Position numbers and translations under genes: made by a program. A DNA stretch of 64,000 bases from Heteronotia binoei. Taxonomy: Eukaryota. Shown piece by piece: positions 9,451 through 58,766 of the stretch. Under the pieces are notes generated by a model. The model saw nothing but the letters and a program-made list of their open reading frames with translations. It had not been told where the DNA came from and ran no database searches. Position 1 is the stretch's first letter; the number at the start of each line of letters is the position of its first letter. Location of the stretch: positions 122,760,001 to 122,824,000 of the forward strand of contig NC_083224.1 in the NCBI RefSeq assembly GCF_032191835.1, in the 5' to 3' direction.

Positions 9451-10792
9451 GAATTTATTGTCATTGTTCTCAACAAAAAGAGAGCAACGAAATGAGGTGC
9501 TCTTCCACAAACATACCAACACATCAAACACACATATTCATAAACCATTTAAATACATCTAAAACCATTAAACCATTTAAACCATTAAAACCATTTAAAT
9601 ACATCTAAAACGGATAAACATTCATAAAACCATTAAAACAATTTAAACCATTAAATAAACATTCATAAAACCATTAAACATTCATAAAACCATTAAAACC
9701 ATTTAAACCATTAAATACATCTAAAACAGATAATCCTTCATAACCCTGCATTTAACCTAACCACAGCACTTGGATAGAAACTGTCCTTAAATCTGTTTGT
9801 CCTAGCCTTCAACACTCTATATCGTCTACCTGACGGTAAGATCTCAAAAAGCAAATGGCCCAGATGTGTATGGTCCCTTAGGATCATTTGTATCTTCCTT
9901 TTACATGCCATATTATACAGATCCACCAATGAGGGGAGAGAACATCCACAAATCTTTTGTGCTCTTCTCGTCACTCTTTGGAGCACCCTTCTCTCTGCTT
10001 CCGTGCAGCTCCCAAACCACGCGCAGAGGCAATAAGATAAAATGCTCTCAATGGAACTACGATAAAAGGCAACCAGCAGACTCCCTGACAGTTGTAGTGA
10101 TCTTAAGAGTCTTAAGTAGTATAGTAGTTGCTGGGCCTTTTTCTCTAGAGCTAAAGTATTTGCCCCCCATGTTAGATCCTGTTTCATGGTAATTCCCAGA
10201 AACTTCCATTCTGTCACCTGTTCTACCATAACACCATCAATAAACAACGGCTGGGTGTCCAAACTACTCTTCCTGTAATCCACTATAATTTCCTTCGTCT
10301 TATTTATATTTAAAATAAGATTATTTACTTTACACCAAAGGGACAGCTGTTGAACTTCCCTCCTGTACGCAGACTCATCATCCTCAGAGATGAGCCCTAC
10401 CAACGTTGTATCATCTGCATACTTAATGATTTTGTTACTCAGACTGCTAGAAACACAATCAGACGTGTAAATAGTGAAAAGAAGTGGACTCAAGACACAT
10501 CCCTGAGGGGTGCCAGTATTTAAGATCTTCACGGAGGAAATATATCCATCCATTTTAACCCTTTGTGAACGACCTGACAAAAAATTCAAAATCCACTCAC
10601 ATATAGAGTCCGACAGCTTCAAATCTTTAAGCTTAAACAACAATCTATGGGGTGATATTGTATTAAAAGCAGAACTAAAATCTGCAAACAACATTCTAAC
10701 ATACGTCCCCTTTTTATCCAAATGCGATAAAGCAGTATAAAGAACAGTATTAACAGCATCCTCAGTAGATCTATTTTTCCTGTAAGCAAAAA
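9404..10792 (-). mobile_element. Rex1/Babar-clade LINE, 5'-truncated, open RT C-terminal frame, (CTAT)n tail
   Basis: ORF 9738..10862 contains FAYRKNRSTEDAV..LSHLDKKGTYVRMLFADFSSAFNTI..PQGCVLSPLLF..KYADDTTLVGLISEDDESAYRREV..NKTKEIIVDYRK, the Rex1/Babar RT signature. 3' UTR has AAACCATT-type repeats (9540-9730) and a GATA microsatellite at 9404-9450. Confidence 0.85.
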
Positions 10793-10878
10793 TAACAAGA
10801 AGAGATATGTACAAGAAGAGATAAACAAGAAGAGATATGTACATTCTTATTATCATTACCACTGTTAGCTAAGCTTAC

Positions 10879-10954: not shown

Positions 10955-13509
10955 CTAGGAATAAAGATATTACAGAAGTGGGAATAAATGTTATTTTCCT
11001 TATACACTAATTGCAGGAGGGAAAAGCCCCTTGGGAAATACTGATTGTCCTATAAAAATGCTTACCATAATCTGCACAAACCAGATATACCGCCTTCTCT
11101 GAAATGCCATTTTAACAGGTGCCTTTTCCCATTAACATAACTTGATTAGAGTTCTCATTTTTTTAAAAAAAAAGTTTAAAAGGTTGAAGAGAAACAGAAC
11201 TGCTAAAAGAAAAATGCAATACTAATGCAAAGCAGATATAAGGTGATGCAAGGGATCCACTTAGAAGTCTACAGTGATGGAAACAGGAAACAAACAAACA
11301 AAAACACCAGAGAGCAAGCAGTACAGATATAAGATACTACATTATAGACATGCAAAAAATTGAAAGTCTGGAGAACAGACAATGCTGGAAGAAAAAAGGA
11401 TAATGAAAATTCAAAATGCACCCAAATTGCACAAAAATATGCACGAATAATTTATCACAAATTCAGAAAAACAGAGCAGGGCAGAGACCAATATGGAAAG
11501 GGGGGGGGGAGAGATATTCAGGGTTTTTAAAATTAAACTTGAAAATTTGAACAGATTTCGAGGAAAAAATAACAAAATGCAAAAACATGAAATGAGCTGA
11601 TATAAAAGAGAAGAAACAGAGCTATTAATCCTGAACTGGAAGTGAAGGAAAGATCATCCCAAAGAAGGCATGGTTGCAAAACAGACACAAGATTGTTGTT
11701 GAGTCCAAGGACATTTAATGTATCTTTGAGATGGCATCGTAACTATGTATACCGTACATCTTCACAAAACAGCATTTTCACATTACTAATTCCTCCACTT
11801 AGTTAAGGAAGGATTGCATTTCCAGATGTTTCACATTCTGTAATAGTTATAATGGATGTTCACACGGCTACAACTGTTCACAGAGAAATGAGTGTTCATG
11901 ATATACTATGAAAACACATGAAAGAACAGAATGAGTAAGCATTATCACTATTAATATATGTCATAATAGATTTTTATTTAAATTTGCATTCAGTCATGAA
12001 AGCACAGTGCCAAGCAACACGTTACAACCATAGACAAAAGCAGAACCTAAATAGAAAAGCATTGAAGATTGAAAAGGTATTAATTTTAGAGCTTACTGTC
12101 ATTCAGTTACCTCAATTAAACTTGCCATTATGCTAATATGTATATCAACAACAAAGTAATTTTAACAAAAATGTTAAAATATTAACAAAAATGTTAAAAT
12201 GTATAGGAGAAAAGGAAAGGTTTTTAAGTGACAGATTAGAATCTGTGTTCTTGCCACCATTTTGCAGTCTGGAAAAACTAGAAAGAGGAAGCTATTGCTA
12301 CTTTGCTGAATAATTATCCATCTAAATGTCAGCAGTGAACACGTGATCCATCTTTTTATGTGCAAAAGAACTGTTCCCCTATGCCCATATTTAATTACAA
12401 TATGGAAATATAGCACACACTCACCTTTGCCTTTGACATCCCAATACACAGACATTTCATTCCTTCAGGCATTTTTTCTGGTTTTTTGTCAGAAATAAAG
12501 CATGTGCAAAATCCAACAGATCACTTACATATGTAAAAATGTAAAACTGCTTGTGAATAGTGAAAAAAGAGAGATGCATATTTATTAACTGCAGCATTCA
12601 GGGTTTTAAAATTGTATACTGCATTGTTTTAGATGTCAAATATACATGTATCAGCTTTCATTTAATAGGACAGGATCAACTGGCAAAGGTAAATACATTG
12701 CCAACTGGCCATATTGTCTATCTCCCCACAGTATTAGCTGTATTCTGTAATAGGAATACAGACGCTAATACTTGTGAAAGTGACACTGTCAGTGCCATCC
12801 AGCACAGAGTTGACTTCAGTGGACATAGAAGAGTATAATTCTGCTTACAATTGCCCTGCAAGATATTTGATTGGTAGACCAGGTAAATGACTGAAAGACC
12901 GGAAATATCTACATGCAGCCAAGAGGTAGGTTTTTCTTGTCTTTCACTTCAGTACCTGATCCACATACATAACTTTTAAAGCCAGTTTAGTTTCTTGAAA
13001 ACTCCATTGAGTCCATTCAGCCAAATGAAATAGAAACTATCTCTTCCTAAGAAAGGAAGGTGGTCTTCAGTCTTCCTTGGAGACTGTCCAACTGGGCTCA
13101 AGAATGATAACAAAGTGCATTTAGTTTAGGTCCCAGCTACACAATGAGATTTAGAACGATCTTCAATGGAACACATTAGTCATGACTTAAATCTATGGAT
13201 TTATACTTGGATTAGATGAATTTAACTTTCTCTGTATTGACTCTGAGTATATACACTAATTCTGCTCACACCATACCCTGGAACATATGGGCTGAATACA
13301 AGTATTTATTTTATCAGTGTATGTGTGTTGAAATGTGTGTACACTTTTCCTTACATGTTATAGAGTGCATACTAACTTGTAACATTTGAACTGGCCTGCA
13401 AAGCCCCTCTATGCACAAAAGACCTACAAGAGCACATCAACTCTTATGTAAGAAACAGCACAGCTTTCTCCTACCCTCTGAAGGCCAAGTCAGGTCCCCT
13501 CTTCCTCTT

Positions 13510-14220
13510 CCTCATGCAACGGTCACCTCGAGACTGGATTACTGTAATGCCCTCTACATGGGGCTGCCTCTGTACCGAACCCGGAAGCTGCAGCTGGTGC
13601 AGAATGCGGCGGCTAGACTGTTGCTGGGGCTTCCTAAATGGGAGCACATACAGCCTGGACTGCGCGAGCTGCACTGGCTGCCAGTTACATACCGGGTTCG
13701 TTACAAAGTGCTGGTCATTACCTTTAAAGCCCTATATGGTCGAGGACCTGTCTACCTTAGGGACCGTCTCTCCCCATATGAACCCCAGAGAGCACTGAGG
13801 TCAGCCGGAAAAAACTTGTTGACTACTCCCGGACCGAGAGAGGTGAAGCTGCAATGTACCCGTAACCGGGCCTTCTCCTCTGTAGCCCCGAGCCTATGGA
13901 ATCAACTTCCAGAGGAAATGCGGGCCCTGCGGGACCTTGAACAATTCCGCAGGGCCTGCAAGACCTTCCTCTTCCGACTAGCTTTCGCTGACGAAGGAAG
14001 AAATTGTTAATGATAACCGCCATCCTAAAGAACAGTATTAGCACTTTTATTAACTTAATTAACTAATTTTAAACCTAATCAGAATTTTAATGCTTAAATG
14101 TAATTTTGTGTTTTTTGCTTTTTGTATAATTGAAATTTGTATGATGTTGTTAGCCGCCCTGAGCCTGCCTCGGCGGGGAGGGCGGGATACAAATAAAATT
14201 ATCTATCTATCTATCTATCT
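13510..14220 (+). mobile_element. L2-clade LINE 3' fragment, relatively young
   Basis: ORF 13411..14010 has HATVTSRLDYCNALYMGLP..LQLVQNAAARLL..LHWLP..FKALYG..RAFS..APSLWNQLP..FKTFLF-like C-terminus; 3' UTR ends AATAAAATT + (ATCT)n. Confidence 0.85.
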
Positions 14221-17777: not shown

Positions 17778-19513
17778 CTAAAACAACAATAAAAGTGGCA
17801 TGAGGAAAATGCAGTGAAAGGCACATTTTCCCTTTCAGATTTAATCACCTACATTGCAGCCTTTCTATGTTAATCTGAAGGAAAGTGCTATAATTCTCTC
17901 TAGAATAAGGGAGGGCATCATGCATCTCTTGCTGCATTTCAGGTGACCCACAGACTCTGGATTAAGTCCCAAGAACTCCAGTTTTCACAAAGTAAACTAT
18001 GTTTCCAGTCTTCATGGGAAAAAATATGGGTCTGAGGCTTAGGCATAGTAGCCAAACTTTTTTTTAAAATGCAGATTTTCAAGGATGTGTGGTTAAATGG
18101 TTGTAATTTTTTTGGGGGGGAGGGGGGGGGTTGAATAAAACATTTGGCATTTAGCAATTCCTGACTTTAAAAAGCAGAAGGGTGTAACACCTATGGCTGT
18201 CGATTACATTATTGAACATTATGGAAAAATCAAAATAAATGAATTATTTTCAGTTCTTTAGTTCTAGTATCTTTTTAAAATAACCTGTGAGGTAAACAAT
18301 GAAGCGTAAACAAATTCTAAACCAACATTAATGAGGTATAGTTTGGGTAAATTTTCAGCTATCTTAATTATACTTCACATTTCTATGTGGAATAAATTTT
18401 GCAAACTGCATTTGTAGTCACTCCAATTTGCAAGTTTACAATACATTTTCATTCATTTCAGCAGTGTGTGGCAAAAGTGGGCTGCAATCCACAAAGAAAG
18501 GCCTAATATAGACATTATTAGTAGAGCATTTCCACTGCTTCCACTGGATTAAGGAATCACATCCAAAGGAACCATGTTGACACCACACGCCCCCTTGGGA
18601 CACATACTATTTATGTATGTTCCTCAATTAGATTTTTTTCAGCTGTATAATTTGGATTAAGTCTAAGTGGTATGCAAATCAAGTTCAAGACCTTTAATGG
18701 CATAATAAAATAATAAATAAAAATACAAACAGGAACTAAAATGAAAGAAGCAATTAAGACAATGTCACTGAGAAAGAAAAAAGAGATTTTTTTTCAGCTG
18801 TATAATTTGGTTCAAGTCTAAGTGGTATGCAGATCAGAAAGCTACACAGTCATGAGTTCATATATTTAGAAGACTTCTGTTTGCAGAAGACTATGTACTG
18901 AGAAAATACTTTGTGTATTCCAAGTATGAAAGCAAATCAGCTCATTTCAGATTAAATAATATTTTTGTGCCCCTTCTGAACACTTCCCACTTAAAAAAAA
19001 CATTATTCTCCCAGAACTCTTATTTTTACATGGCAGCTACTTCCCATAAAAAGATGTGTTATTCTCTAGGTTTATGTGGAAGCACTATTCTTAAATCCCA
19101 GATGTATACATTTGTAAACTGCTGTTCTGACAGCTCAAGCAGATTAATTATATATTATCTAATAAAATAAAGAATATCCACAAATACATGGAAAACTGAC
19201 ATTCTTTGCACAATCTCCTACAATCTCATCTGATTAACAGCAGACTCCTATAAATTTTCCATTTTAATTTATTTACAAAAGTCTTACAGCACTTTTAAAA
19301 AGGCAGACATCATCCCTGTCTTATTAAAGGCAACTATACAGGTGAAAACTCTCTGCAATACCTTTACCTACTCTGTTTGTGTCTCCCCTACATGCATCCT
19401 CAGAATTGCACATATAAACTGTTTCTGGGAAACCTGTAACACTATTCAGCTTTATATTTTCTTTCCTTTTTGCTATTTAACAATTGCATTAATCTTGAGA
19501 AAAAAGTATTTAC

Positions 19514-19911
19514 TGTCGGAGCGGGAGTAGCAGAGTGAGGGAGATGACTTGCCCGACACAGGGCTTCAGGAAAGAAAATCAGGCAGACACGTGCAACTAG
19601 TGCCAAAAGGTGTATTAACATATATACACAACAAGTGCTCTCTTGTGCAGTCTATACAATATCACCTCCACGGACAAAGTGCTTCGCCTAACCACCATCT
19701 CACAGGGAGAGACCTGTGTGATGCACACACAGATCATATATAGTCCAAGCAGCCAATCCTGGCCATGCTGACTCAGCAGATTGCATCACTTGGCTTCTGC
19801 CGGCTCAAGCCGGTCTGCTGATCAGGTCACTGTGACCTAGCCTGGCAGCTAGATCGCCAGCTGTCATACTGTGGCTGTCAGACTGGGTTTATGTAGATTC
19901 TTGCTCCAACA
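19514..19911 (-). repeat. 3' LTR of the copia element
   Basis: Direct repeat of 22836-23233, TG...CA ends, preceded on the minus strand by a polypurine tract (19912-19928). Confidence 0.95.
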
Positions 19912-19997
19912 CACCTCCTAATCTATTTAAACCCAGTATACCCAAAACACTTTACACAGTTTACATACATGTCCACCAGCAACATTACAGTTCATAT

Positions 19998-22658
19998 TTA
20001 CGTAGCTCGGAACCCTTTCCGGAATTCGTTCAGGAACTCATCATGATTGTAAAACACATCATCGTGTTCCTGTTCAGCCAGCTCTTTCAGACGCTTGGCT
20101 TCAGCCTCCTTCTCCCTTGCCTCGCACTCTGCCACCCAGGCTTTCCATTTCTTAGCCTTTTCTTTTAACATTTCCTCTAATCCGGGTGGGTCTGGATTGA
20201 CAGTCAGAGTGACATAGGGACACTTGTACCTAGCGGGACGTTGGCCTTTGGTGGACCTGGCAGACACCCGTGGCCCTGTGCTTGGACCAGCTTTGTCTTC
20301 TTCGGGTTGCTCTGTTCCCACCTCCTGGGCTGGTTGCTCTGCCCCTGTAATTGGGTGTTGAACCTCCTGACTCTCACACTTTACCTCCAGTTCCTGCATT
20401 TGAGGCTCTGCCTCCTGACTCTGCTCGTCGGGCTCTGTGCCAGCATTCGGCTCACCTTCTCCAGCCCCACTGGGTGCCACCTCCTGGGCTGGAGTTCTGG
20501 GCTGCGCTCCAACATCGTTATCGCTACTTGGCAGCAGGACAAATTGTTTCTGCAAGGAGTGCAACCTTGGCCAGCTGCTCTCTTCATTGAACTGGGCACT
20601 CTGACTAAGTGTTATCTTGCTTTTGCTATTGCAGAAACGATAACACCTGGCCCTTGGCTTGTAGCCCAGAAAAATTAGGCTCTCTGCCCGGACATCCCCC
20701 TCCCCGCTACTCGTGGAGTGGATGCCAACCCGAGCCCGTGACCCAAAGACTTTTAAAGAACTCAAATCTGGGGTCTTGTTCAACAGTAACCTGTAAGGCA
20801 CATTTTTCACAGTATTACACCAAACCCTATTTTGCAAAAAAACAGCTGCATGTATGGTTTCTGCCCAATAGGTCATTGGCAGTTGTGCATCCTCTAACAT
20901 GCAATACATCACATTCTGCAATACAGCCCCATGCCCATTTTCTCGGGGCGTTGCCGGGTTCGTCAGACGGTGGGCAATGCCCTTGTTCTCCAGCCAACGT
21001 TTCATCTGGTTAGATAAGAATTCCCCCCCTCTGTCGGTTTGTACAGCTAGGAGATTAACCCCTAATTGTCTCTCCACTGCTTTGACCCACTTGGTGAATG
21101 TCTTATACACCTCAGACTTATGCACCATGGTGAAAACCCACGCGTACCTCGTGTGGTCGTCGGTGGCCACCAAGCAGTATCTCCTCCCCGACAGACTCTT
21201 TGGCAATGGGCCAATAACGTCTAAATGGACTAGTTCCAGGGCTCGTGTGCTTTCCCTTGAGCTTTCTTTAGCAACAGCACACGCCTTGCTTTTGGTCTTC
21301 TTGCAGACCTGGCAATCCAAGTAACATTTGCAAGGATTTACTTTCAAACTAGGCACAAGCTCCAGGGTTTTCTTTAACGCCCTAAATCCGCAGTGCCCAA
21401 GTCTCCTATGGAGCAAATGTATACAATTATTGTGCACAGGCTCATTCGACACCTGAGCCACCTGGGCACAATCACTCTGGACCACATACAGTTTACCTTC
21501 CCTCTTTCCTGTCACAAGCAACTTTCCCCCACCTCCCAGGATTTTGCAGCAGGTTTTCTCAAATCTCACCTGGTATCCCTGGTCAAACAGTGTGCTAACA
21601 CTCAACAGGTTAGACTGCAGTGAGGGTACATACAACACATTTTGCAACATACATTTCAGTGCAGGAAATTCCACATTGCCTGAGCAAACAGAATTGGCAG
21701 TGGTCCCATCAGCCAATCTCACATACTTATGCTCAGGACTGTCAATGTTTTTCAACAACTCCTTCTCGCAGCAGAGATGGCTCGTTGCCCCGGAGTCTAA
21801 AATCCAAGCAGACCCTGTGCTCTCTACTGCAGACGTGACCAGCCGGGTTGCTTCCTCACACGGGCTGGCGGTCCTCCGCTCTCGCCGCACACGCCCCCGC
21901 CTCTTCTCCCTCTCAGGGCAAGCTCGGAGCAGGTGCTGCGACGACCCGCATCCATAGCAGCGACGGACTGCAAACGCAGTCGGCTCCACTTCCTCCACCT
22001 TCGGACGCCTGCCAGCAGCAGAAGCTGGCTCATTCTTGGCTGTCTTCCCGGACACACCGATAACAGCACGCTGCCCGGCCGACACCCCCGGACAGCTCAC
22101 GGCCGCAATTCTCTCTTGGAAGTCAAGCAGGTGGGCACAGACGTATTCCATGGTCAGGGTCGCTACGTCCACCGTCTCCAGAGAAGTTATCAGGGGAGTG
22201 TACTCAGGTGGCAACGACGACAGCAAAATGTACACTCTGTCGTCTGGAGCTACAGTCTTGCCTCTTGCCTCCAGCTCAACGAAACAGTCCGTTAGCCGTT
22301 TGATGTGATCTTTCACACACCCTCCAGCCGGCATAACGGTGCGGAACATCCTCCTTGTCAAGGCCATGAGGGAACCAGCAGTGGTGCTAACATGCACCGC
22401 ACTCAACGCGTCCCAGGCAGCCTTGGGAGTGTCCTTCCCTCGCACATAAACCAGCTGGTCATCTCCTATAGATAGCACTATGTTGGCCAGTGCCTTATCC
22501 GATAACACAGTCTCGGCAGGAGATAAGTCAGCAGGGGGGTTACTCACGAACAGCCATTGCCCTTCACGCTTGAGGTAGTGTTGCATTCTCAGGCTCCACA
22601 CCGCGTAGTTGGCTGAGGTGAGCTTCTCAACGGCTACTCCAAGCTGTTGCTGAGCCAT
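19998..22658 (-). CDS. Copia Gag-protease-integrase polyprotein (886 aa), no RT/RNase H
   Basis: Gag N-terminus (KLTSANYAVWSLRMQHYL), UBN2-like capsid region, CCHC knuckle CYGCGSSQHLLRAC, protease WILDSGATSHL, HHCC region LHRRLGH..CQVC, integrase HLDVIGP/QTDRGGEF, SH3-like FLGY; no YVDD motif or RNase H. Confidence 0.9.
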   Translation of the reverse strand: MAQQQLGVAVEKLTSANYAVWSLRMQHYLKREGQWLFVSNPPADLSPAETVLSDKALANIVLSIGDDQLVYVRGKDTPKAAWDALSAVHVSTTAGSLMALTRRMFRTVMPAGGCVKDHIKRLTDCFVELEARGKTVAPDDRVYILLSSLPPEYTPLITSLETVDVATLTMEYVCAHLLDFQERIAAVSCPGVSAGQRAVIGVSGKTAKNEPASAAGRRPKVEEVEPTAFAVRRCYGCGSSQHLLRACPEREKRRGRVRRERRTASPCEEATRLVTSAVESTGSAWILDSGATSHLCCEKELLKNIDSPEHKYVRLADGTTANSVCSGNVEFPALKCMLQNVLYVPSLQSNLLSVSTLFDQGYQVRFEKTCCKILGGGGKLLVTGKREGKLYVVQSDCAQVAQVSNEPVHNNCIHLLHRRLGHCGFRALKKTLELVPSLKVNPCKCYLDCQVCKKTKSKACAVAKESSRESTRALELVHLDVIGPLPKSLSGRRYCLVATDDHTRYAWVFTMVHKSEVYKTFTKWVKAVERQLGVNLLAVQTDRGGEFLSNQMKRWLENKGIAHRLTNPATPRENGHGAVLQNVMYCMLEDAQLPMTYWAETIHAAVFLQNRVWCNTVKNVPYRLLLNKTPDLSSLKVFGSRARVGIHSTSSGEGDVRAESLIFLGYKPRARCYRFCNSKSKITLSQSAQFNEESSWPRLHSLQKQFVLLPSSDNDVGAQPRTPAQEVAPSGAGEGEPNAGTEPDEQSQEAEPQMQELEVKCESQEVQHPITGAEQPAQEVGTEQPEEDKAGPSTGPRVSARSTKGQRPARYKCPYVTLTVNPDPPGLEEMLKEKAKKWKAWVAECEAREKEAEAKRLKELAEQEHDDVFYNHDEFLNEFRKGFRAT

Positions 22659-22821
22659 CGTGCCGACTCCTCCTCACAGCTGGCTGCCGACGTCCCTCTG
22701 GCTCTCAAACAGAGAACGGTGGTGCTTCTGTGTCCTTCACCGGCGTTCCTCGCCTCCGGCTCTTTCCAAACTCACAGTCAGCTCAACTCTCAACTCTCTC
22801 CTCCGCGCAGCGGAACCGCCC

Positions 22822-22835
22822 TGGGCCCATAACCC
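22822..22835 (-). promoter_or_regulatory. Primer-binding site of the copia element (half-tRNA-iMet type)
   Basis: Minus strand reads GGTTATGGGCCCAG immediately after the 5' LTR, the PBS sequence known from Drosophila copia. Confidence 0.85.
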
Positions 22836-23233
22836 TGTCGGAGCGGGAGTAGCAGAGTGAGGGAGATGACTTGCCCGACACAGGGCTTCAGGAAAGAAAA
22901 TCAGGCAGACACGTGCAACTAGTGCCAAAAGGTGTATTAACATATATACACAACAAGTGCTCTCTTGTGCAGTCTATACAATATCACCTCCACGGACAAA
23001 GTGCTTCGCCTAACCACCATCTCACAGGGAGAGACCTGTGTGATGCACACACAGATCATATATAGTCCAAGCAGCCAATCCTGGCCATGCTGACTCAGCA
23101 GATTGCATCACTTGGCTTCTGCCGGCTCAAGCCGGTCTGCTGATCAGGTCACTGTGACCTAGCCTGGCAGCTAGATCGCCAGCTGTCATACTGTGGCTGT
23201 CAGACTGGGTTTATGTAGATTCTTGCTCCAACA
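22836..23233 (-). repeat. 5' LTR of the copia element
   Basis: Direct repeat of 19514-19911; contains TGCTGAGTCAGCA, ATTGG and TATATA in that order on the minus strand. Confidence 0.95.
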
Positions 23234-24508
23234 TTTACACCAATAAGGGAAGGAACAATCCATGTTTATCAACAGCTATACTGATTAATTCCAGCTCTAA
23301 TATTTAGAAGAAAAAATCTCAATCTTCCAACACAGAGATTTTAACACTGCAAGCATCCCACACAGTTCCTCTCTCTCAAAAAAATATATTTTTCTACTTT
23401 CATTTTGGGGGGGGGGGGAACAGCTTTAGGGTGGAACAGAATAATTTCAAGCTGAACCGCTTGCCTCTAAAAATGTTACTCTGACCAATGAAGCAGATGC
23501 AAAATTACAGTCACAGCTGTATTCAGAGCACAACAAGGTGGGTAATGGAAAACTAAATTGCTAATTAAATTGCTAATGATTTTTGTTAGTGCCTCTACTG
23601 TATTTTGTCATTTTTAAAACATAAAAAGTATGCAGAAGATATTTTAACACTGCCAAGTTTCTGATTTTGCTAAGTACCACAGAGACCTCTAAAGACTGCC
23701 ACCTATAAAAGAAGCGTGGATGTGGGCACATGAAACAGCAGGCTTGCTTTACTGACCAGCCATTTAGGTACATCAATGCTTCCTCCTCAATTTTGCATCC
23801 TTTAAGGCTACCTGCCTCATGAACTCCTCTGCATTAGGGCTTGGAGCAGCACCCACAGTTGGTATTTGAAGGTAATAAACTGGAATATGTCGTGACATAA
23901 TAGCTCTGGAAATAGACACTGGCCACATTTTACCAAAAAGAAAGAAAGAAAAGAAAAGCAGAGCAACAGTACAATTTTATTTTTATTGTGATAACTGTAG
24001 GGGAAATTTATTGCAGTGTTAGTATTTTATTGTTTCATTATGTTAGATTAGCTGAGAGAGGTAGTTACATTCTCAACATAAAAATGTCTTTAATGTTTTC
24101 ATTTCAATTTTGCAGTTTATAATATGCAGATTACAGCATTATCATAATCCCATATTGTTATATGTACAGTGAGATGACAGTGCGTTTTCTCCTCCAATTA
24201 CAGAGCTAATTTCTAATAAATGATTTCCACAAGATCCCTAGTTCATCTGGCATTTGAAAGGTGTATACATAAAAAATTATCCTGCAATTCCTTGTTAAAG
24301 TCAATTTCCTCATGCAAGTTAGATTATTGTATAAGAATACAATACAATGTCTTCTCCCAAAGACATCTAGCAGTCACTTCTTCTTCATACTCAAAAATGC
24401 TTTATGATGGATTGCCAAGTAATTTATCATAGTCTCAGTGAACTGCCAATCATTTATGTTTATTCCAGAAAATAAATTTAATCCCAGGAACAGAAATGCA
24501 AAACTTAC

Positions 24509-32477: not shown

Positions 32478-33570
32478 ATTTATTTTTGTTAATTTGCATT
32501 CCGCCCTTTCCCGCAAGCAGGCTCAGGGCGGATCACAACAAAAAACAATTAAAAACTACAAGCTAAAGCCATAAAATACAATAAAACAAATAACACATAT
32601 ATCAAAGGCAATGGTTACCATTGGGCACATTCTATATATCTGTACAGCTGGAGGCCCAGAGATGAAATAATAAATTAAGATAAAATAATATAGCATCATG
32701 GCAGGCAAGGGAGGCCAAGCAGATGGAAATAAGAATGTCCGCTGCCTCAACCAAAGGCCCGGTGGAACAGCTCCATCTTGCAGTCCCTACAAAATGGCAT
32801 CAAATCAGGTAGGGCCTGAATCTCCACAGGGAGCTGATTCCACCAGGCTGGGGCCAAGGCCAAAAAGGCCCTGGCCCTGGTCAAGGCAAACTGAACATCC
32901 TTTAGGCCAGGGACAGTCAACGCAGCTATCTCTGGGGCACATATGGGGAGAGGCAGTCCCACAGGTATGTTGGTCCCAGGCTGCATAAGGCTTTAAATGT
33001 TAAAACCAAAAGCTTGACGCGAATCCGGTACACTATTGGTAGCCAGTGCAATTGGTGCAGCATTGGCTGGATGCTTGCCTGTAGAGGCAATGCAGTTACC
33101 AGCCGTGCTGCTGCATTTTGCACCAGCCGAGTCAGCCGCAAGGGCAAGCCTGCGTAGGGCGAGTTACAGTAGTCCAATCTGGAAGTTACTGTCGCATGGA
33201 TCGCTGTAGCGAAGTCCTGGGAGGACAGGTAGGGTGCTAGTTGTCTAATCTGCCGAAGATAGCAAAAGGCAGATGGAGCAACTGCTGTGATCTGGGCCTC
33301 CATGGAAAGTGAGGCATCCAGTATCACTTCTGGGCTGGCACAAGACATGCACAAGACAGTGTTGGTAGCCAGATACCCGACTCTAACCCCCCACGGCTCA
33401 AGCATAGGTCCTCCATTTTAGCTGGATTAAGCTTCAGCCAACTTAACTGCAGCCATCCAGCCACAGCTTCTAAGGCCCTAGTCAGATGATCTGGGGTAGA
33501 GTCTGAATGGCTGTCCATTAACAGATAGAGCTGGGTGTCATCTGCATACAGGTGACAACTTTTCTAAATC
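32478..33570 (-). mobile_element. L2-clade LINE 3' fragment, degraded
   Basis: ORFs 32926..33405 (HATVTSRLDYCN..VQNAAARL..LHWLP..FKAL) and 32747..32986 (RAFLALAPAWWNQLP); (TTTA)n tail near 32480. Confidence 0.8.
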
Positions 33571-35349: not shown

Positions 35350-37361
35350 GTAATGGAAGCTGTAAAAGGTAAGAAGGAATCCTTTAAGCGGTGGAAAACC
35401 AGTCCAAGTGAGATTAGTAAAAGGGAACACAGGCTGTGGCAAATCAAATGCAAGACTGTGATCAGGCAGGCAAAAAGGGACTTTGAGGAGCATATTGCAA
35501 AAAACATAAAGACCAACAATAAAACTTTCTTCAAATATATTAGAAGTAGGAAACCAGCCAGGGAGGCAGTGGGGCCTTTGGATGACCATGGGGTAAAAGG
35601 ATTACTGAAGGAGGATAGGGAAATGGCTGAGAAGCTAAATGAATTTTTTGCCTCCGTCTTCATTGTGGAAGATGAGAACTTTTTGCCCGCCCCAGAACCA
35701 CTAATTTTGGAAGGGGTATTGAAAGACCTGAGTCAGATTGAGGTGACAAAAGAGGAGGTCCTACAACTGATAGACAAATTAAAAACTAATAAGTCACCGG
35801 GTCCGGATGGCATACATCCGAGAGTTCTGAAAGAACTCAGTTGAACTTGTGGATCTTCTAACAAAAATCTGTAATCTTTCATTGAAATCTGCCTCCGTTC
35901 CTGAGGACTGGAAGGTAGCAAATGTCACCCCCATCTTTAAAAAAGGTTCCAGAGGAGACACGGGAAATTACAGGCCAGTCAGTCTGACTTCAATACCGGG
36001 AAAGTTGGTAGAAACCATTATCAAGGACAGAATGAGTAGGCACACTGATGAACACGGGTTATTGAGGAAGACTCCGCATGGGTTCTGCAAGGGAAGATCT
36101 TGCCTCACTAACCTGTTACATTTCTTTGAGGGGGTGAACAAACATGTGGACAAAGGAGACCCAATAGATGTTGTTTACCTTGACTTCCAGAAAGCTTTTG
36201 ATAAAGTTCCTCATCAAAGGCTCCTTAGAAAGCTTGAGAGTCATGGAGTAAAAGGACAGGTCCTCTTGTGGATCAAAAACTGGCTGAGTAATAGGAAGCA
36301 GAGAGTGAGTATAAATGGGCAGTCTTCACAGTGGAGGACGGTAAGCAGTGGGGTGCCGCAGGGCTCGGTACTGGGTCCCATGCTCTTTAACTTGTTCATA
36401 AATGATTTAGAGTTGGGAGTGAGCAGTGAAGTGGCCAAGTTTGCGGATGACACTAAAGTGTTCAGGGTGGTGAGAACCAGAGAGGATTGTGAGGAACTCC
36501 AAAGGGATCTGTTGAGGCTGGGTGAGTGGGCGTCAACGTGGCAGATGCGGTTCAATGTGGCCAAGTGCAAAGTAATGCACATTGGGGCCAAGAATCCCAG
36601 CTACAAATACAAGTTGATGGGGTGTGAACTGGCAGAGACTGACCAAGAGAGAGATCTTGGGGTCGTGGTAGATAACTCACTGAAAATGTCAAGACAGTGT
36701 GCATTTGCAATAAAAAAGGCCAACTCCATGCTGGGAATTATTAGGAAGGGAATTGAAAACAAATCAGCCAGTATCATAATGCCCCTGTATAAATCGATGG
36801 TGCGTTCTCATTTGGAGTACTGTGTGCAGTTCTGGTCGCCGCACCTCAAAAAGGATATTATAGCATTGGAGAAAGTCCAGAGAAGGGCAACTAGAATGAT
36901 TAAAGGGCTGGAGCACTTTCCCTATGAAAAAAGGTTGAAACGCTTGGGACTCTTTAGCTTGGAGAAACGTCGACTGCGGGGTGACATGATAGAGGTTTAC
37001 AAGATAATGCATGGGATGGAGAAAGTAGAGAAAGAAGTACTTTTCTCCCTTTCTCACAATACAAGAACTCGTGGGCATTCGATGAAATTGCTGAGCAGAC
37101 AGGTTAAAACGGATAAAAGGAAGTACTTCTTCACCCAAAGGGTGATTAACATGTGGAATTCACTGCCACAGGAGGTGGTGGCGGCCACAAGTATAGCCAC
37201 CTTCAAGAAAGGTTTAGATAAAAATATGGAGCACAGGTCCATCAGTGGCTATTAGCCACAGTGTATGTGTGTATATAAATTTTTTTGCCACTGTGTGACA
37301 CAGAGTGTTGGACTTGATGGGCCGTTGGCCTGATCCAACATGGCTTCTCTTATGTTCTTAT
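35350..37361 (+). mobile_element. CR1 LINE, 5'-truncated, ORF2 RT with one frameshift near 35845
   Basis: ORFs 35353..35844 and 35849..37255: KSPGPDGIHPRVLKEL, NYRPVSLTS, YLDFQKAFDKVPH, GVPQGSVLGP, KFADDTK, LEYCVQFWSP; tail CTTATGTTCTTATG. Confidence 0.95.
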
Positions 37362-38127: not shown

Positions 38128-39051
38128 ACACACAACTGCCTTACACTGAACTAGACCCTTGGTCAGTCAAGGTCCAGATTGTCTGCTTAGGCTGGCAGTG
38201 TCTCTCCAGGGTCTCAGCCAGAGGTCTTTCATAACACTTACTGCCTGGTCCTTTTAACTGGAGATGCCAGGGACATTGAACCTAGGACCTCCTGCATACA
38301 AGCAGATGCTCTGTCACTGAGTTACAGCCCTTCCCAAGGCACTGTCTAGTCCAGACCACTCGGACAAGCCACAAGAGCATTGAGGTTTTAGTTTTTTGCC
38401 TAGCAGTTTAGTTTCATTTACAAGTAGTTTGCATGGCAAACTAATGAATTATGAGATCTGCACCAATGACAGTGTTCTCTTGGCTAGTAGCTCATAGCTC
38501 AATTCTGTACATTTTCTCAGAAGTGAATCTTACTGAGTTTAGTGGGACTTACTCTCAGGTAAGTGTATATAGGATTGGGGCCTCGGTCTTTTCAAAATGA
38601 TGTCGTTTTTTTCACGGGGAATGCATCAAGTTACTAATATGAACATTGCTAGCTCTGTATAATGCTAGATCTGTAAATTCATAGCAAGATCTGATCTTAT
38701 ACATGAGGAACAGGCAGACTTGGCTTGCTTGACTGAAACTTGGCTGGATGACTCTGATGTGGTCACTTTGATATGCCTGACACCACATATAAAGTCCTTC
38801 AACCTCAAACAGGAGGATGAAGGGGTAGTATTTCTTTTTTTGTGAATTTTTTTTCCCATCACTAAGTATCCAGAACAGATAGAGCCTTTGACTATGTGTA
38901 TCAATACTCCCTCTAAGCTGTGGAGTCTTGTGAGCACAAATTCTACTTCATGAACTACTGGCATTAAAGTTGTGAGTGAGCAATTCGGCTACTGCATAGA
39001 TTAGTTTGCTGTGGGGCCACCCTTCCTGAGCTAAGATAAAAATGTATGAGT

Positions 39052-40409
39052 TTACCAAAGCCTTCGATACCGTTAGCAGGAAAGGCCTGTGGCAAATCTT
39101 GGAACGTTTAGGATGTCCCCCAAGGTTCCTCAGCATGATCATCCAGCTACATGAAGACCAGCGAGGCCAAGTCAGACACTGCAACGACCTCTCGGAGCCC
39201 TTCCCAATAGGCACAGGTGTAAAGCAAGGCTGCGTTCTCGCGCCAACTCTCTTTACGATCTTCTTTAGCATGATGCTTCAAAGAGCCGCAGTAGATCTAG
39301 ATGATGACGATGGTGTCTACATCCGCTATCGCACCGATGGCAGCCTGTTCAACCTGAGGCGACTAAAGGCCCACTCCAAGACGATGGAAAAACTCATCCG
39401 AGAACTACTGTTTGCTGATGATGCTGCACTCGTCTCCCACTCGGTATCAGCTCTGCAGCATATGACGTCCTGCTTTGCAGAGGCTGCCAAGCTATTCGGC
39501 CTAGAAGTTAGTCTGAAGAAGACAGAAGTTCTCCACCAGCCTGCACCCCAGGAAGATTATCACCCTCCCTGCATCACTGTGGGTGAATTAGTTCTGAAGA
39601 CAGTCCAGCAGTTCAGCTACCTGGGGTGCATCATCTCCTCAGCTGCCAAGATCGACAAGGAGATTGACAACAGGCTGGCAAAGGCAAACCGTGCATTTGG
39701 CCGACTGCACAAAAGAGTGTGGAGCAACAAGCATCTGAAAAAAGGCACAAAGATCAATGTTTACAAAGCGGTTGTGATGACAACCCTCATCTACGGCTCC
39801 GAATCGTGGGTTTTATACCGTCATCACCTGCGACTCCTCGAGCGCTTTCATCAGCGCTGCCTTCGCTCCATCCTCAACATCCACTGGAGTGACTTTGTGA
39901 CCAACACTGAAGTCCTCAAGCGGGCGGAGGTTACCAGTATCGAGGCACTGCTGCTGAAGACGCAGCTGCGCTGGGCAGGGCATATTTCTAGGATGGAAAA
40001 CCACCGCCTTCCCAAGATTGCCCTGTATGGCGAACTCTCCACCGGCCATCGAAATAGAGGGGCACCAAAGAAGAGGTACAAGGACTCCTTGAAGAAATCC
40101 CTTGGCACCTGTCGCATCAACCATCACCAGTGGTCTGACCTAGCCTCAGATCGCAAAGCATGGAGACACACCATCCACCAGGCTGTCTCTTCCTTTGAGA
40201 ACGCATGCATAGCTGGTCTTGAGGACAAAAGGAGATTGAGGAAGAATCGCACTGCTACAGCACCAACCCTAAATCAGACTTTTCCCTGCAGCCACTGTGG
40301 CCGGACCTGCCTGTCCCGCATTGGTCTTGTCAGCCACCAGCGAGCCTGCAGCAGACGTGGACTATTGCACCCTTCTTAAATCTTCGTTCGCGAAGCCAAG
40401 CCGAGAGAG
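39052..40409 (+). mobile_element. RTE-clade LINE (AviRTE-like), 5'-truncated, open RT C-terminal frame
   Basis: ORF 39042..40379: TKAFDTVSR, GVKQGCVLAPTLF, YRTDGSLFNLRRL, LLFADDAAL, QLRWAGH, C-terminal CSHC..H..C; 3' end AAATCTTCGTTCGCGAAGCCAAGCC + (GA)n; candidate TSD ATGAGT (39046-39051, 40410-40415). Confidence 0.9.
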
Positions 40410-56527: not shown

Positions 56528-57030
56528 ATCAATGATTACATTAGTAATTAAAGATTCCCAACTTAATTAATAGAAAATAATAACATTCAGTTGAAATCAG
56601 ACATTAAAAAACCACTAGGATCTTCTTCGTGGTCTCTGTGCTTCACACTCATGGGATAGTGCGCCTGCGCCAATCCCCGAATTGGTACCTGAAAAGCCCG
56701 GGATTTTTCCGCGCTCGGCGCCAATGGGCATGCACAGGCGTCCCATTGCGCATGCTCATCGGCGCCAGCGCGGGGATCCCACCAGTTCCTTTCTGACCGC
56801 CGCGCTGAGAGAATTCCCTTTCGTGTGTCCCCGGTCAGTAAGGTAGTTGTTGGATTGCCTTTATCTCTTGTTGTATATAGCCCATTTGTTATTTTTCTTA
56901 GTGCAGTTAGTTGTTAGTTACTTAGTAAAAAAAAAAGTGTGTTGTTGTTGGACTTGCCCTTCAGGGCTTTGCTTTTCCCCCCTGTTTTTCCCCTCAGAAA
57001 CTTTCCTGAGCGGGTTTTTTCCTTGCGTCT

Positions 57031-58240
57031 ATGGAAAGGCGCTGGGGTTTTTTCAAGAGGTGCCGATCTTGTGGGAAGAAGATTGTCCCCCCGATGGCCA
57101 TCCCCTTTGTCTCCTTTGCCTGGGTGAAGGGCACCATGTGGACTCTTGTGTGCATTGCTTAAGCTTCTCGAAGCAGACGCGCAAGAATCGAGCAGTGAGA
57201 CTTTCGGCTGCATTGGTCGAATCGGCACTTTGGCTGCAGAAGATGGCATCGGGCCTGTCGGTACCGATGGGAGAGTCCACGGCCCCTCCGGTCGCATCGG
57301 CCGATACATCGCCGATCGAGACTGAGATGCCCATCGAGCGTGGGCGATCCACAAAGCATCCCTCTGAAGGGTCGGTGGACACCCCAGCGAAGCGGCATTG
57401 GGATGAGTCAGGGACCCGATCATCCGCGCCAAAGAAGGCTAAGTCTAAGGAGAAGCTGAAGAAGAGGTTGTCCCGCACTCCTTCGCCCTCTCGAGATGCC
57501 TCGGCGTCGACGGCTCCACCGCAAAAAATCCTGGCATCCCCTTGTCTCAGCCCTTCGGTGTCGAGAGGCAGCGCTTCACAGCAACTCCCTCTCTCGGCAT
57601 CGGAGCAAGAGATCGATCTCACCCAGCGATCCCATTCCTCTGGATCGAGGCGGCGTAGTGAGAGTGACTCGGTCTCGGAAGTTGAGATATCAGCACCGAT
57701 ACAATTGGCGGAGCCGATGGACCAGGTGAAAGGTCAAAGAGAAGTGGAACCATCATCAGCTCTTCGGCGCTTCCCACCACCACCACCTTGGGAGCAGTGT
57801 CACTGGCCTTCGCCTTACTCGTACCCCTATCCACTGTACCAATGGTACCCCCCGTGGGACTATGCAGAGTGGGACCGACAATCTGAGGCATCCCAGATGT
57901 CGAGACTCTCCCAACACTCTGGACGTCGCCCTTCGGCAGCGATCTCCGTCCCACCTGAGAGGCACGCTGTGGCGGTAGAGGAGGCCCGCTCACGCTCATT
58001 GGTAGCGATTCGATCACCCATCGGAATCGACACCGATGCTTTCGGAGCATTCACTGCGAAGAGAGTCCTCATCGTCGGAATCAGATGGTACCGACGATCC
58101 GGACAGAGCCCCAGAACCTTCGCCAGTGTCGCATACGGCTGAGGATCTTCCTATTTCACCATCGGGGGATCTGAAGTCGTATGAAGACCTGGTCAAGAGG
58201 ATGGCGACTTCTCTTTCCCTTCCAATAACACAGCGTGACA
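57031..58240 (+). pseudogene. DIRS gag-like ORF, frameshifted
   Basis: MERRWGFFKRCRSCGKKIVP then a shift to DGHPLCLLCLGEGHHVDSCVHC..KNR; the C-terminal SPSGDLKSYEDLVKRMA lies in a further frame (58036..58377). Confidence 0.75.
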
Positions 58241-58299
58241 CATCGACTGCGATTGCATTGCCTGTGCCTCATCTTGCAGGCAGACTCTCAGCAGGGGCG

Positions 58300-58766
58300 C
58301 GGCTTCCCTGTGCGAGTGGGAACTGCAGTGGCGCTTCCTCCAACCTGTTTTCCAGCTTTGGGGGTATCCTCAGGTGAATGTCTTTGCCACAGCCAAGAAC
58401 AGGAAGTGTCCTCTGTTTTGTTCCAGAGGGGGTGCGGATCCAGAGTCGTTGGGAGACGGTCTGCTGTTTCCGTGGGAAGGTCGGTTCTTCTATCTGTTTC
58501 CGCCTCTGCCGTTGTTGACGAAGGTCAACAAAATCGCAAGAGAGAGACCATGCTGCATCCTGGTGACTCCCTGGTGGCCTCGCCAGAACTGGTTTCCAAT
58601 CCTGCTCCAGCTGGTGAGGGGGGTCGTCTACCAGTTTCCGGCAAAACTGGACCTTCTGTTAGCTCAGGGAGGTCATGTCCTCCATCACAACGTGCCCCAC
58701 CTGAAGTTGACAGCATGGTTCATCGACCCTGTGGGTTCTCTAGTAGAGTCCAGCATGTCTTCATAA
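58300..58766 (+). pseudogene. DIRS RNase H C-terminal remnant + methyltransferase-like domain
   Basis: LS....EWELQ..FQLWGYPQVNVFATAKNRKCPLFCS..DG....W...YLFPPLPL..VNKI....ILVTPWWPRQNWF. Confidence 0.8.

What the first reader, a model, noticed from the sequence alone, without database searches (positions are those of the whole stretch)
19514..23233. Recently inserted copia element that keeps an open Gag-PR-IN ORF but has no reverse transcriptase or RNase H
Seen: LTRs with no difference found over 398 bp, intact TSD, PBS and PPT, and an uninterrupted 886-aa ORF; total length only 3,720 bp, with no YVDD motif or RNase H anywhere. Known: each copia insertion requires reverse transcription, which makes the two LTRs identical, so this RT-less structure was itself retrotransposed using RT supplied in trans unless the deletion happened after insertion. 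Inference: an active non-autonomous family that makes its own capsid and protease (probably packaging its own RNA in cis) and borrows RT and IN from a helper. Such coding parasites are known as gag-only elements in plants; a Gag-PR-IN form in an amniote would be unusual.
Basis: partly seen in the sequence, partly recalled or inferred. Interest (0 to 1): 0.8.

Follow-up and report, generated by a model that had tools for sequence, protein, structure and literature searches.

The report
Young copia retrotransposon lacking reverse transcriptase
A recently inserted copia-type jumping gene in a reptile-like genome keeps one open gene for its capsid, protease and integrase but has no reverse transcriptase, and its integrase has lost a catalytic residue, so it must depend on a related element to move; whether it belongs to a multiplying family could not be tested here.

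Summary
Window 19514-23233 (minus strand) is a 3,720-bp Ty1/copia element. It has two identical 398-bp LTRs, a 5-bp target-site duplication (TTTAC), a primer-binding site, a polypurine tract and one 886-aa Gag-protease-integrase ORF. No reverse transcriptase or RNase H is present in any frame.

New points:
- Homology to full-length copia polyproteins stops about aa 846, at the conserved helix just before RT. The last 40 aa match nothing.
- The integrase lacks four residues that include the catalytic Glu of the D,D,E triad. Every relative examined keeps it.
- The primer-binding site is complementary to the anticodon arm of initiator tRNA-Met, as in Drosophila copia.

The element is therefore non-autonomous. 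Two separate lesions in so young a copy favour a template that was already defective and was moved in trans.

"Active family" remains untested. No close relative exists in any searchable library (best 44% identity, a Podarcis copia), and the source genome cannot be searched.

A precedent does exist. An invertebrate-like assembly holds at least four copies of a 3,050-bp RT-less Gag-PR-IN copia with one shared deletion junction, different target duplications and dN/dS of about 0.2. A second RT-less lineage was also seen.

Verdict: a real feature, a new variant of a known kind, of moderate interest.

The parts
19509..19513 (.). Target-site duplication, left copy (TTTAC)
   Evidence: Same 5 bases directly flank both LTRs
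19514..19911 (-). 3' LTR of the element (398 bp; in element orientation TGTTGG...CGACA)
   Evidence: 398/398 identical to 22836-23233; two TATATA boxes; no A[AT]TAAA motif found
19912..19924 (-). Polypurine tract AGATTAGGAGGTG abutting the 3' LTR
   Evidence: Read directly; resembles the PPT of the Podarcis copia L001 (..AGGAGGAGTG)
19925..19997 (-). Short 3' untranslated stretch between the stop codon and the PPT
   Evidence: no similarity to RNase H C-termini in any frame
19998..20120 (-). Last 40 codons plus stop (aa 847-886, REKEAEAKRL...GFRAT): sequence after the point where homology to copia polyproteins ends; origin unexplained
   Evidence: No match to RT, RNase H or copia C-termini; profile of 90 copia C-termini scores -0.1 bits, within 200 shuffles
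20121..20570 (-). Acidic linker and the conserved pre-RT block (R-x-S-x-R..P-x-R-Y, then P..E.....W..) that normally leads into RT; homology stops at about aa 846
   Evidence: Alignments A2: R801, P824, E829, W838 aligned with full-length polyproteins; RVT_2 begins right after this block in relatives
20571..21491 (-). Integrase: HHCC zinc finger (H417, H422, C449, C452), core with D480 and D542, SH3-like C-terminal domain
   Evidence: Pfam gag_pre-integrs 390-456, rve 472-571, SH3_retrovirus 627-696; conserved columns
20931..20936 (-). Site in the IN core (between G575 and H576) where 4 residues, including the catalytic Glu, are absent relative to all relatives
   Evidence: Window ENG----HGAVLQ against ENGVAE[SC]RGGVLQ (Podarcis) and NGVAER elsewhere; the Glu is 100% conserved in 90 full-length copia polyproteins; no hidden frame
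21573..21806 (-). Aspartic protease (beta-barrel), active-site D288-S-G
   Evidence: Pfam Pol_BBD 285-362, E=1e-19; all conserved columns met
21879..22658 (-). Gag, with CCHC zinc knuckle C234-X2-C-X4-H-X4-C247 (window 21918-21959); start codon at 22656-22658
   Evidence: Pfam Retrotran_gag_2 27-183 (E=3e-23) and DUF4219; conserved columns
22659..22835 (-). 5' untranslated leader; its first 15 nt (22821-22835) are the primer-binding site GGGTTATGGGCCCAG, with weaker complementarity continuing to about 22805
   Evidence: Complement CTGGGCCCATAACCC is an anticodon arm with anticodon CAT; the same 14-15-mer follows the 5' LTR in L001, L003 and L004
22836..23233 (-). 5' LTR of the element (398 bp)
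23234..23238 (.). Target-site duplication, right copy (TTTAC)

Best explanation
This is a young insertion of a non-autonomous Ty1/copia element, a deletion derivative that has lost RT and RNase H. It probably works as follows.

1. The 5' LTR drives a genomic RNA that keeps all the cis signals: R-U5, a primer-binding site for the 5' half of initiator tRNA-Met, a polypurine tract and U3-R.
2. That RNA is translated into an 886-aa Gag-protease-integrase polyprotein. Its Gag and protease look functional. Its integrase has the zinc finger and both Asp residues but lacks the catalytic Glu.
3. Reverse transcription and integration of this RNA need RT/RNase H, and very probably active integrase, from an autonomous copia of the same clade. 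These would be supplied inside shared virus-like particles.
4. The copy in the window was made that way, from a template that was already defective.

Shown: the anatomy, the absence of RT/RNase H, the integrase lesion, and the youth of the insertion.

Inferred: mobilisation in trans, that the lesions predate the insertion, and which proteins are functional.

Not shown: other copies, a helper, or expression.
For: Anatomy and youth:
- Identical 398-bp LTRs, the 5-bp duplication, PBS and PPT.
- CpG observed/expected is 0.51 in the element against 0.11-0.18 in the flanks, so little methylation decay has occurred.

Non-autonomy:
- No RT or RNase H in six frames.
- Homology ends at the pre-RT block.
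- The catalytic Glu of IN is absent, while it is invariant in 90 full-length relatives and present in the closest lizard copies.

Lesions probably older than the insertion:
- There are two independent deletions in a copy with no substitution in 796 LTR bases.

Selective preservation:
- Gag, PR and the zinc finger deviate at 2 of 31 highly conserved columns, which is ordinary (36 of 90 full-length sequences deviate as much).
- The IN core and C-terminal domain deviate at 11 of 38. However, 6 of these are shared with the intact relative P0094.

Helper compatibility is plausible:
- LTR ends TGTTGG..CGACA, the 15-nt PBS and the PPT are shared with a full-length RT-bearing copia of Podarcis lilfordi (L001), although the proteins are only 39-48% identical.

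Precedent that this architecture replicates:
- Assembly ERZ26858995 holds at least four 3,050-bp RT-less Gag-PR-IN copias (L004-L007).
- They share the same junction.
- The three copies whose two LTRs are both on the contig have no LTR mismatch and different duplications (AGATT, CTTGT, GAACC); the fourth (L007) is cut at its 5' end by the contig end.
- Copies are 96.8-97.5% identical to L004.
- dN/dS is 0.14-0.23 overall and 0.11-0.18 in IN.
- No autonomous relative is closer than 77% aa.
- A second RT-less lineage is in L003.
Against: - Only one copy is known. No member of the family, RT-less or full-length, was found in the window, in 5.8 and 1.8 billion-protein libraries (best 44%), by exact look-up, or in metagenome and viral contigs.
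- Identical LTRs and a duplication are equally expected if the deletion arose during the reverse transcription that made this copy, or shortly after insertion.
- The analogue's junction has 7/8-nt microhomology, which shows that such deletions arise by template switching.
- Most IN deviations are clade traits. The case for a dead IN therefore rests mainly on one 12-nt deletion, and a nearby Glu (E573) cannot be excluded as a substitute.
- The analogue keeps its catalytic triad and the window element does not, so the two are not the same solution.
Confidence: 0.6

Rival explanations
1. One-off defective copy. A full-length RNA from an autonomous copia was reverse-transcribed by its own enzymes. 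RT jumped between short homologies and skipped RT/RNase H, so the copy was dead on arrival and no RT-less family exists.
For: Template-switch deletions are a known product of retroelement replication (established knowledge). The analogue family's junction lies in a 7/8-nt microhomology with no splice signals, so every RT-less lineage must begin this way. No second copy of the window element is known.
Against: It needs a second independent lesion, the 12-nt loss of the IN catalytic stretch, either in the same replication cycle or already in the parent. If it was already in the parent, that parent was itself dependent on a helper. The 40-aa tail shows no relation to a copia C-terminus, unlike the simple in-frame junction of the analogue.
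Confidence: 0.22
2. Deletion in the chromosome after a full-length element had inserted, by replication slippage or repair.
For: It cannot be excluded from one copy. Internal deletions of LTR elements do occur.
Against: Two separate deletions (RT/RNase H and 12 nt in IN) would have to fall within a period too short for a single substitution in 796 bp of LTR. Both would also have to leave the reading frame open.
Confidence: 0.08
3. Retrotransposed spliced RNA. The RT/RNase H region was removed as an intron from a subgenomic RNA, which was then copied and inserted.
For: Copia elements do make spliced subgenomic RNAs (PMC5580714; the 2-kb RNA of Drosophila copia, from my own knowledge). Several AG|G contexts lie near the breakpoint.
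Against: Known copia splicing yields Gag-only RNA (or Gag-PR RNA in Drosophila copia, from my own knowledge), not Gag-PR-IN. In plants it is coupled to premature termination, which removes the 3' LTR signals (PMC5580714). The one junction that could be compared with a parent (the analogue) has no GT..AG.
Confidence: 0.05
4. Assembly artefact: a collapse or mis-join inside a full-length element.
For: It cannot be tested without reads.
Against: The join leaves an open frame and a coherent element. There are no N runs in the window, and similar natural structures exist elsewhere.
Confidence: 0.03

Closest known systems
Autonomous Ty1/copia (Pseudoviridae) elements of lizards, e.g. the 4.6-kb element in Podarcis lilfordi OX395139.1 (locus L001, protein CAI5791960)
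   Same: Gag-PR-IN domain order and 5-bp duplication. Same LTR ends (TGTTGG..CGACA), the same 15-nt PBS against the anticodon arm of initiator tRNA-Met, and a similar PPT. It is the best protein match (44% reported by the library search; 39-48% by tblastn).
   Different: The Podarcis element carries RT (RVT_2, E=4e-56), and its IN keeps the catalytic Glu. The window element has neither. The proteins are far apart, so it is a different family.
RT-less copia family of ENA assembly ERZ26858995 (loci L004-L007, protein cluster P0003), found here
   Same: An LTR-flanked copia with one Gag-PR-IN ORF (841-842 aa) and RT/RNase H removed from the IN/RT border to near the 3' end. LTRs are identical within each copy where both can be compared, and the PBS is of the same type.
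   Different: It is about 30% identical in protein and the host is probably an invertebrate; the only named relative among the best 120 matches listed is a cephalopod protein at 52%. Its IN triad is intact and under purifying selection. Its tail is the parental C-terminus joined in frame. At least four copies are documented, against one here.
IAP 1-delta-1 elements of mouse (non-autonomous, coding deletion form of an endogenous retrovirus)
   Same: An internal deletion leaves an open reading frame. Movement needs proteins in trans from full-length relatives. The encoded protein helps its own RNA in cis. The host is an amniote (PMC6466679).
   Different: It is a class II endogenous retrovirus, not copia. 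The deletion removes part of gag and pol and creates a fusion protein, rather than removing RT/RNase H cleanly.
Gag-only non-autonomous LTR retrotransposons of plants (RLG_Quinta, RLG_Sabrina; TR-GAG type)
   Same: They are non-autonomous partners that still encode a structural protein and share PBS and LTR termini with an autonomous helper (PMC11302176).
   Different: The named examples, Quinta and Sabrina, are Gypsy-superfamily plant elements. They encode Gag only, lacking PR, IN and RT.
Drosophila copia
   Same: Priming by the 5' half of initiator tRNA-Met rather than by a tRNA 3' end (PMC10275265, citing Kikuchi 1986). The polyprotein is a single ORF.
   Different: Drosophila copia is autonomous.

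Membership tests
Ty1/copia LTR retrotransposon (Pseudoviridae) | Two LTRs with TG..CA ends flanked by a short (usually 5-bp) target-site duplication | tested here: met
   398-bp identical LTRs, TG..CA ends, TTTAC duplication
Ty1/copia LTR retrotransposon (Pseudoviridae) | Copia-type Gag, aspartic protease and integrase, with integrase placed before RT | tested here: met
   Pfam Retrotran_gag_2, Pol_BBD, gag_pre-integrs, rve and SH3_retrovirus in that order. The pre-RT block follows IN.
Ty1/copia LTR retrotransposon (Pseudoviridae) | Copia-type reverse transcriptase (RVT_2) and RNase H | tested here: not met
   Absent in all six frames. The element is therefore a derivative of the family, not a complete member.
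Ty1/copia LTR retrotransposon (Pseudoviridae) | Primer-binding site next to the 5' LTR and polypurine tract next to the 3' LTR | tested here: met
   GGGTTATGGGCCCAG and AGATTAGGAGGTG. That the PBS matches initiator tRNA-Met rests on the CAT anticodon arm read from the sequence and on recalled tRNA sequence. Rfam did not call a half tRNA.
Non-autonomous LTR retrotransposon family with an autonomous helper | Lacks at least one enzyme needed for its own replication | tested here: met
   No RT or RNase H. IN lacks the catalytic Glu.
Non-autonomous LTR retrotransposon family with an autonomous helper | Several copies with the same internal structure at different duplication-flanked sites | not testable with these tools
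   The source genome is not searchable. There is no other copy in the window or in any library. This feature is met for the analogue family only.
Non-autonomous LTR retrotransposon family with an autonomous helper | An autonomous partner in the same genome sharing PBS, PPT and LTR termini | not testable with these tools
   Only a cross-species hint: the Podarcis element L001 shares these signals.
Non-autonomous LTR retrotransposon family with an autonomous helper | Purifying selection on the retained ORF across copies | not testable with these tools
   This needs at least two copies. In the analogue family dN/dS is 0.14-0.23.
Domesticated (host-co-opted) Gag/IN gene | Loss of LTRs and other mobility signals; single orthologous locus | tested here: not met
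   Intact identical LTRs, duplication, PBS and PPT

The most novel reading that the evidence does not exclude
RT-less Gag-protease-integrase copia elements are a recurrent and so far undescribed kind of semi-autonomous retrotransposon. They persist as lineages of their own for long periods, under purifying selection on their three retained proteins, and take only RT/RNase H from distant helpers. On this reading the window element is a reptilian member that has gone one step further and also given up integrase catalysis.
Probability: 0.3. Interest if true: 0.65.

Novelty: new variant of a known kind. Interest (0 to 1): 0.45.

Why it matters
Non-autonomous LTR retrotransposons are usually described as non-coding (LARD, TRIM) or Gag-only, and mostly in plants.

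A copia that keeps Gag, protease and integrase but drops only RT/RNase H would show which functions a parasite of a retrotransposon gains by encoding itself (capsid, processing, perhaps integrase as a structural or targeting partner) and which it can safely borrow.

The analogue family found here shows purifying selection on integrase in an RT-less lineage. That makes the question testable.

For the reptile genome, a zero-divergence insertion implies that a working copia RT was present very recently. Such insertions are likely to be polymorphic markers.

Tried and rejected
Searches for other copies (all negative):
- LTR 30-mer, blastn and tblastn against the rest of the window: none.
- The search for homologous proteins, best 32%.
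- Exhaustive phmmer against 1.84 billion representatives, best 44%.
- Exact-protein look-up: not on record.
- The search for related loci in metagenome and viral contigs: nothing.

PBS: Rfam on the PBS region gave no partial tRNA call, and ARAGORN found no tRNA gene in the window.

Broad decay of IN, rejected: of 11 deviations at conserved IN columns, 6 are shared with the intact full-length relative P0094. Only the 4-residue deletion and three substitutions are specific to the window element.

Double frameshift hiding the catalytic motif, rejected: the other frames hold stops and no such motif.

The 40-aa tail as the parental C-terminus, not supported: it gave no BLAST hit of note and a profile score within shuffles.

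The many ~800-aa RVT_2-less copia proteins in the libraries as RT-less elements, rejected as a general reading: P0439 and P0518 are followed at once by an RT ORF in another frame. Only L004-L007 and L003 were verified at the DNA level.

TARE1 of tomato, checked as a possible analogue: it is autonomous.

Host identity: the CR1 RT ORF at 35849-37255 is 70-74% identical to turtle CR1 and about 52% to bird CR1. This indicates a non-avian reptile-like genome but names no species.
Full report
**1. What is there**

Window 19514-23233 is a complete LTR retrotransposon on the minus strand, 3,720 bp long.
- The two LTRs (19514-19911 and 22836-23233) are identical over all 398 bp and have TG..CA ends.
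- The first 30 bases of the LTR occur nowhere else in the window, and none is expected by chance.
- TTTAC flanks both ends as a 5-bp target-site duplication.
- In element orientation the 5' LTR is followed at once by GGGTTATGGGCCCAG.
- The 3' LTR is preceded by AGATTAGGAGGTG.
- One ORF of 886 aa (19998-22658, minus) fills the interior.

Pfam places the following domains in order:

| Domain | Residues | E-value |
|---|---|---|
| DUF4219 and copia Gag | 13-183 | 3e-23 (Gag, 27-183); 4e-6 (DUF4219, 13-35) |
| Pol beta-barrel (protease) | 285-362 | 1e-19 |
| gag_pre-integrs | 390-456 | 1.3e-6 |
| Integrase core (rve) | 472-571 | 1e-12 |
| SH3-like integrase C-terminal domain | 627-696 | 3.6e-13 |

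There is no RVT_2 or RNase H match. tblastn of 11 full-length copia polyproteins against the element gives one alignment from Gag to IN and nothing for their RT/RNase H halves in any frame (best E=0.45).

**2. Where the coding region ends, and a second lesion**

Aligned with full-length polyproteins, the ORF follows them through the acidic linker after IN. It then follows the conserved block that precedes RT (R-x-S-x-R..P-x-R-Y, then P..E.....W; ORF residues R801, P824, E829, W838). Homology ends at about aa 846, within a few residues of where RVT_2 starts in relatives.

The last 40 residues (REKEAEAKRL...GFRAT) match nothing: not RT, not RNase H, not copia C-termini. A profile of 90 copia C-termini scores them at -0.1 bits, inside the range of 200 shuffles. 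Their origin is unexplained.

The integrase is not intact.
- Where every relative reads N-G-V-[AS]-E-R (the closest lizard copies read E-N-G-V-A-E-[SC]-R-G-G-V-L-Q), the window ORF reads E-N-G-H-G-A-V-L-Q.
- Four residues are missing, including the Glu of the D,D,E catalytic triad.
- That Glu is invariant in 90 full-length copia polyproteins.
- The other frames hide no such motif.
- D480 and D542, the HHCC finger, the protease D-S-G and the Gag CCHC knuckle are all present.

I first read the IN as broadly decayed, because it deviates at 11 of 38 highly conserved columns against 2 of 31 in Gag, PR and the zinc finger (Fisher p=0.03). However, 6 of the 11 deviations are shared with P0094, an intact 1,303-aa relative with RT. 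They are clade traits. What is specific to the window element is the 4-residue deletion plus three substitutions.

**3. Youth**

- Zero differences in 398 bp gives only an upper bound on age. The 95% bound is about 3/(2 x 398 x rate), which is a few million years at 1e-9 per site per year (my calculation; the rate is assumed).
- Independently, CpG observed/expected is 0.51 in the element against 0.11-0.18 in the flanks. This fits DNA that has spent little time under germline methylation decay.

**4. Priming**

The complement of the PBS, CTGGGCCCATAACCC, is an anticodon arm with anticodon CAT and a run of G:C pairs. These are features of eukaryotic initiator tRNA-Met (established knowledge; the tRNA sequence itself is recalled, not tool-derived). 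Weaker complementarity continues for about 31 nt.

The same 14-15-mer follows the 5' LTR in the Podarcis copia L001, in L003 and in L004. This is the internal, half-tRNA priming known from Drosophila copia (PMC10275265, citing Kikuchi 1986). Rfam did not call a partial tRNA here.

**5. Relatives**

Nothing close exists in the libraries. The best match of 1.84 billion representatives is 44% identical: P0093, protein CAI5791960 of Podarcis lilfordi (the assembly was identified through). Its locus L001 is a 4.6-kb copia with 265-bp LTRs that are 99% identical, an RT domain (E=4e-56), and an ORF broken in a few places.

L001 shares with the window element:
- the LTR ends TGTTGG..CGACA,
- the PBS (15 of 15),
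- a similar PPT.

The cis signals are therefore conserved across this lizard-type clade although the proteins are only 39-48% identical. The best intact full-length relative, P0094, is 36% identical and comes from a metagenome contig.

The window looks like a non-avian reptile genome.
- It holds several LINE-type RT ORFs.
- One is a CR1 RT, 70-74% identical to turtle CR1 and about 52% to bird CR1.
- Copia is reported as present in reptiles but lost from birds and mammals (PMC4350176).

**6. The key test could not be run**

No further copy is present:
- in the window,
- in the protein collections,
- on record by exact sequence,
- in metagenome or viral contigs.

The source genome is not searchable with these tools.

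**7. What can still be argued from one copy**

The element as it stands cannot replicate alone. The open question is whether the template RNA was already defective. Two independent deletions (about 1.4 kb of RT/RNase H, and 12 nt in IN) sit in a copy that has not gained one substitution in 796 LTR bases.

- Origin after insertion would need two rare events in a very short time.
- Origin in the final reverse transcription would need two errors in one cycle.
- If either lesion was already in the parent, the parent itself depended on a helper.

I therefore favour a template that was already non-autonomous, at about 0.6. A one-off template-switch product is at about 0.2.

**8. A precedent found on the way**

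Some hits were about 840-aa copia proteins without RVT_2, and I checked them at the DNA level.

In ENA assembly ERZ26858995 the P0003 cluster has 25 members. None of the 15 listed exceeds 842 aa. It corresponds to a 3,050-bp element with these properties:
- 253-bp LTRs, an 841-842-aa Gag-PR-IN ORF and no RT.
- The four loci L004-L007 are colinear over the whole element, and L005-L007 are 96.8-97.5% identical to L004.
- The three copies that carry both LTRs (L004-L006) have no mismatch between them and different 5-bp duplications (AGATT, CTTGT, GAACC). The fourth, L007, is cut at its 5' end by the contig end.
- Between copies dS is 0.07-0.10 and dN/dS is 0.14-0.23. IN is the most constrained part at 0.11-0.18 (Nei-Gojobori, my script).
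- Its catalytic triad is intact.

The closest autonomous relative in the 5.8-billion-protein library is only 77% identical, and it lies in another assembly. Aligned with that relative:
- about 1.35 kb of RT/RNase H is missing,
- the junction lies in a 7-of-8-nt microhomology (CCAATTGGA / GCAGTTGGA),
- it is in frame, and the missing piece has no GT..AG at its edges.

This is a template-switch type deletion, not a splice. The 15-aa tail is the parental C-terminus.

A second RT-less lineage is the Logan contig L003.
- It is circularly permuted, with a 31-nt overlap of its ends.
- It has the same PBS type and an 845-aa ORF.
- An RNase H C-terminal remnant lies after the stop.

In all three lineages the 5' break falls within about 60 residues of the IN/RT border.

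A caution: most RVT_2-less copia proteins of about 800 aa in the libraries are not of this kind. P0439 and P0518 are followed immediately by an RT ORF in another frame.

**9. Comparison with what is known**

Non-autonomous LTR elements that still code for something are known:
- Gag-only partners such as Quinta and Sabrina in grasses (PMC11302176).
- In an amniote, the mouse IAP 1-delta-1 form. Its deletion leaves an open gag-pol fusion that acts in cis, while the other proteins come in trans (PMC6466679).

Known copia subgenomic RNAs are Gag-only, or Gag-PR in Drosophila copia (the latter from my own knowledge), and in plants they lose the 3' end (PMC5580714). A retrotransposed spliced RNA is therefore an unlikely source.

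I found no paper describing an RT-less Gag-PR-IN copia. That search covers open-access text only.

**10. Verdict**

The feature is real and correctly described. It is a non-autonomous copia derivative and a new variant of a known kind.
- The claim of an active family is plausible but untested.
- The claim of rarity in amniotes is weakened by IAP 1-delta-1.
- The integrase defect and the recurrence of the same architecture in unrelated lineages are the points most worth following up.

Interest is 0.45.

Conservation was counted column by column, and a profile of C-termini was used only to score the tails.

Noticed in passing
L004:4724-7773, L005:1224-4273, L006:1224-4270, L007:1-2938 (ENA ERZ26858995): A 3,050-bp RT-less copia family with a Gag-PR-IN ORF. 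All copies share one microhomology deletion junction. LTRs are identical within each copy where both are present, and target duplications differ. dN/dS is about 0.2, and the nearest autonomous relative is only 77% identical. The host was not identified; the only named relative among the best 120 matches listed is a cephalopod protein at 52%.
   Followed up: partly
L003:1-3766 (Logan ERR14657514): A circularly permuted contig (its ends overlap by 31 nt) carrying an 845-aa Gag-PR-IN copia ORF, a half-tRNA-iMet PBS, no RT, and an RNase H C-terminal remnant (PADMLTKVV) about 220 nt after the stop. It is either a collapsed LTR element or a one-LTR circle.
   Followed up: partly
L009:555-4455 (ENA ERZ25069711) and the P0439 locus (ERZ25068966): Copia elements in which a roughly 800-aa Gag-PR-IN ORF overlaps by a few dozen bases an RT ORF in another frame. 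One such cluster has 48 members. This could be a shared frameshift mutation or a programmed frameshift between IN and RT.
   Followed up: no
L001:5578-10195 (Podarcis lilfordi OX395139.1): A full-length 4.6-kb copia with 99% identical LTRs and CCCTC duplication, annotated as a 584-aa gene with introns. Its first LTR base pair reads TA where the 3' LTR reads TG.
   Followed up: partly
window 35353-37255 (+), 39042-40379 (+), 9738-10862 (-): Three long LINE-type reverse-transcriptase ORFs (RVT_1). The 468-aa one is CR1-like, 70-74% identical to turtle CR1 proteins. The ORFs are long enough to suggest fairly recent LINE activity.
   Followed up: partly
window 56847-59742 (+): A G+C-rich block (about 51%) with ORFs of 431, 303 and 156 aa that have no Pfam match. 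By eye the last ORFs resemble a tyrosine recombinase of DIRS/Ngaro type. This was not tested.
   Followed up: no
window 61167-61237 (+): A tRNA-like sequence that passes the Rfam tRNA threshold (33.6 bits) but is not called by ARAGORN. It is probably the head of a tRNA-derived SINE.
   Followed up: no
window 13411-14010 (+), 32926-33405 (-), 53713-54282 (+): Three ORFs share a motif (..VTSRLDYCN..GLP....KLQLVQNAAAR..). They are probably C-terminal parts of one LINE family scattered through the window.
   Followed up: no
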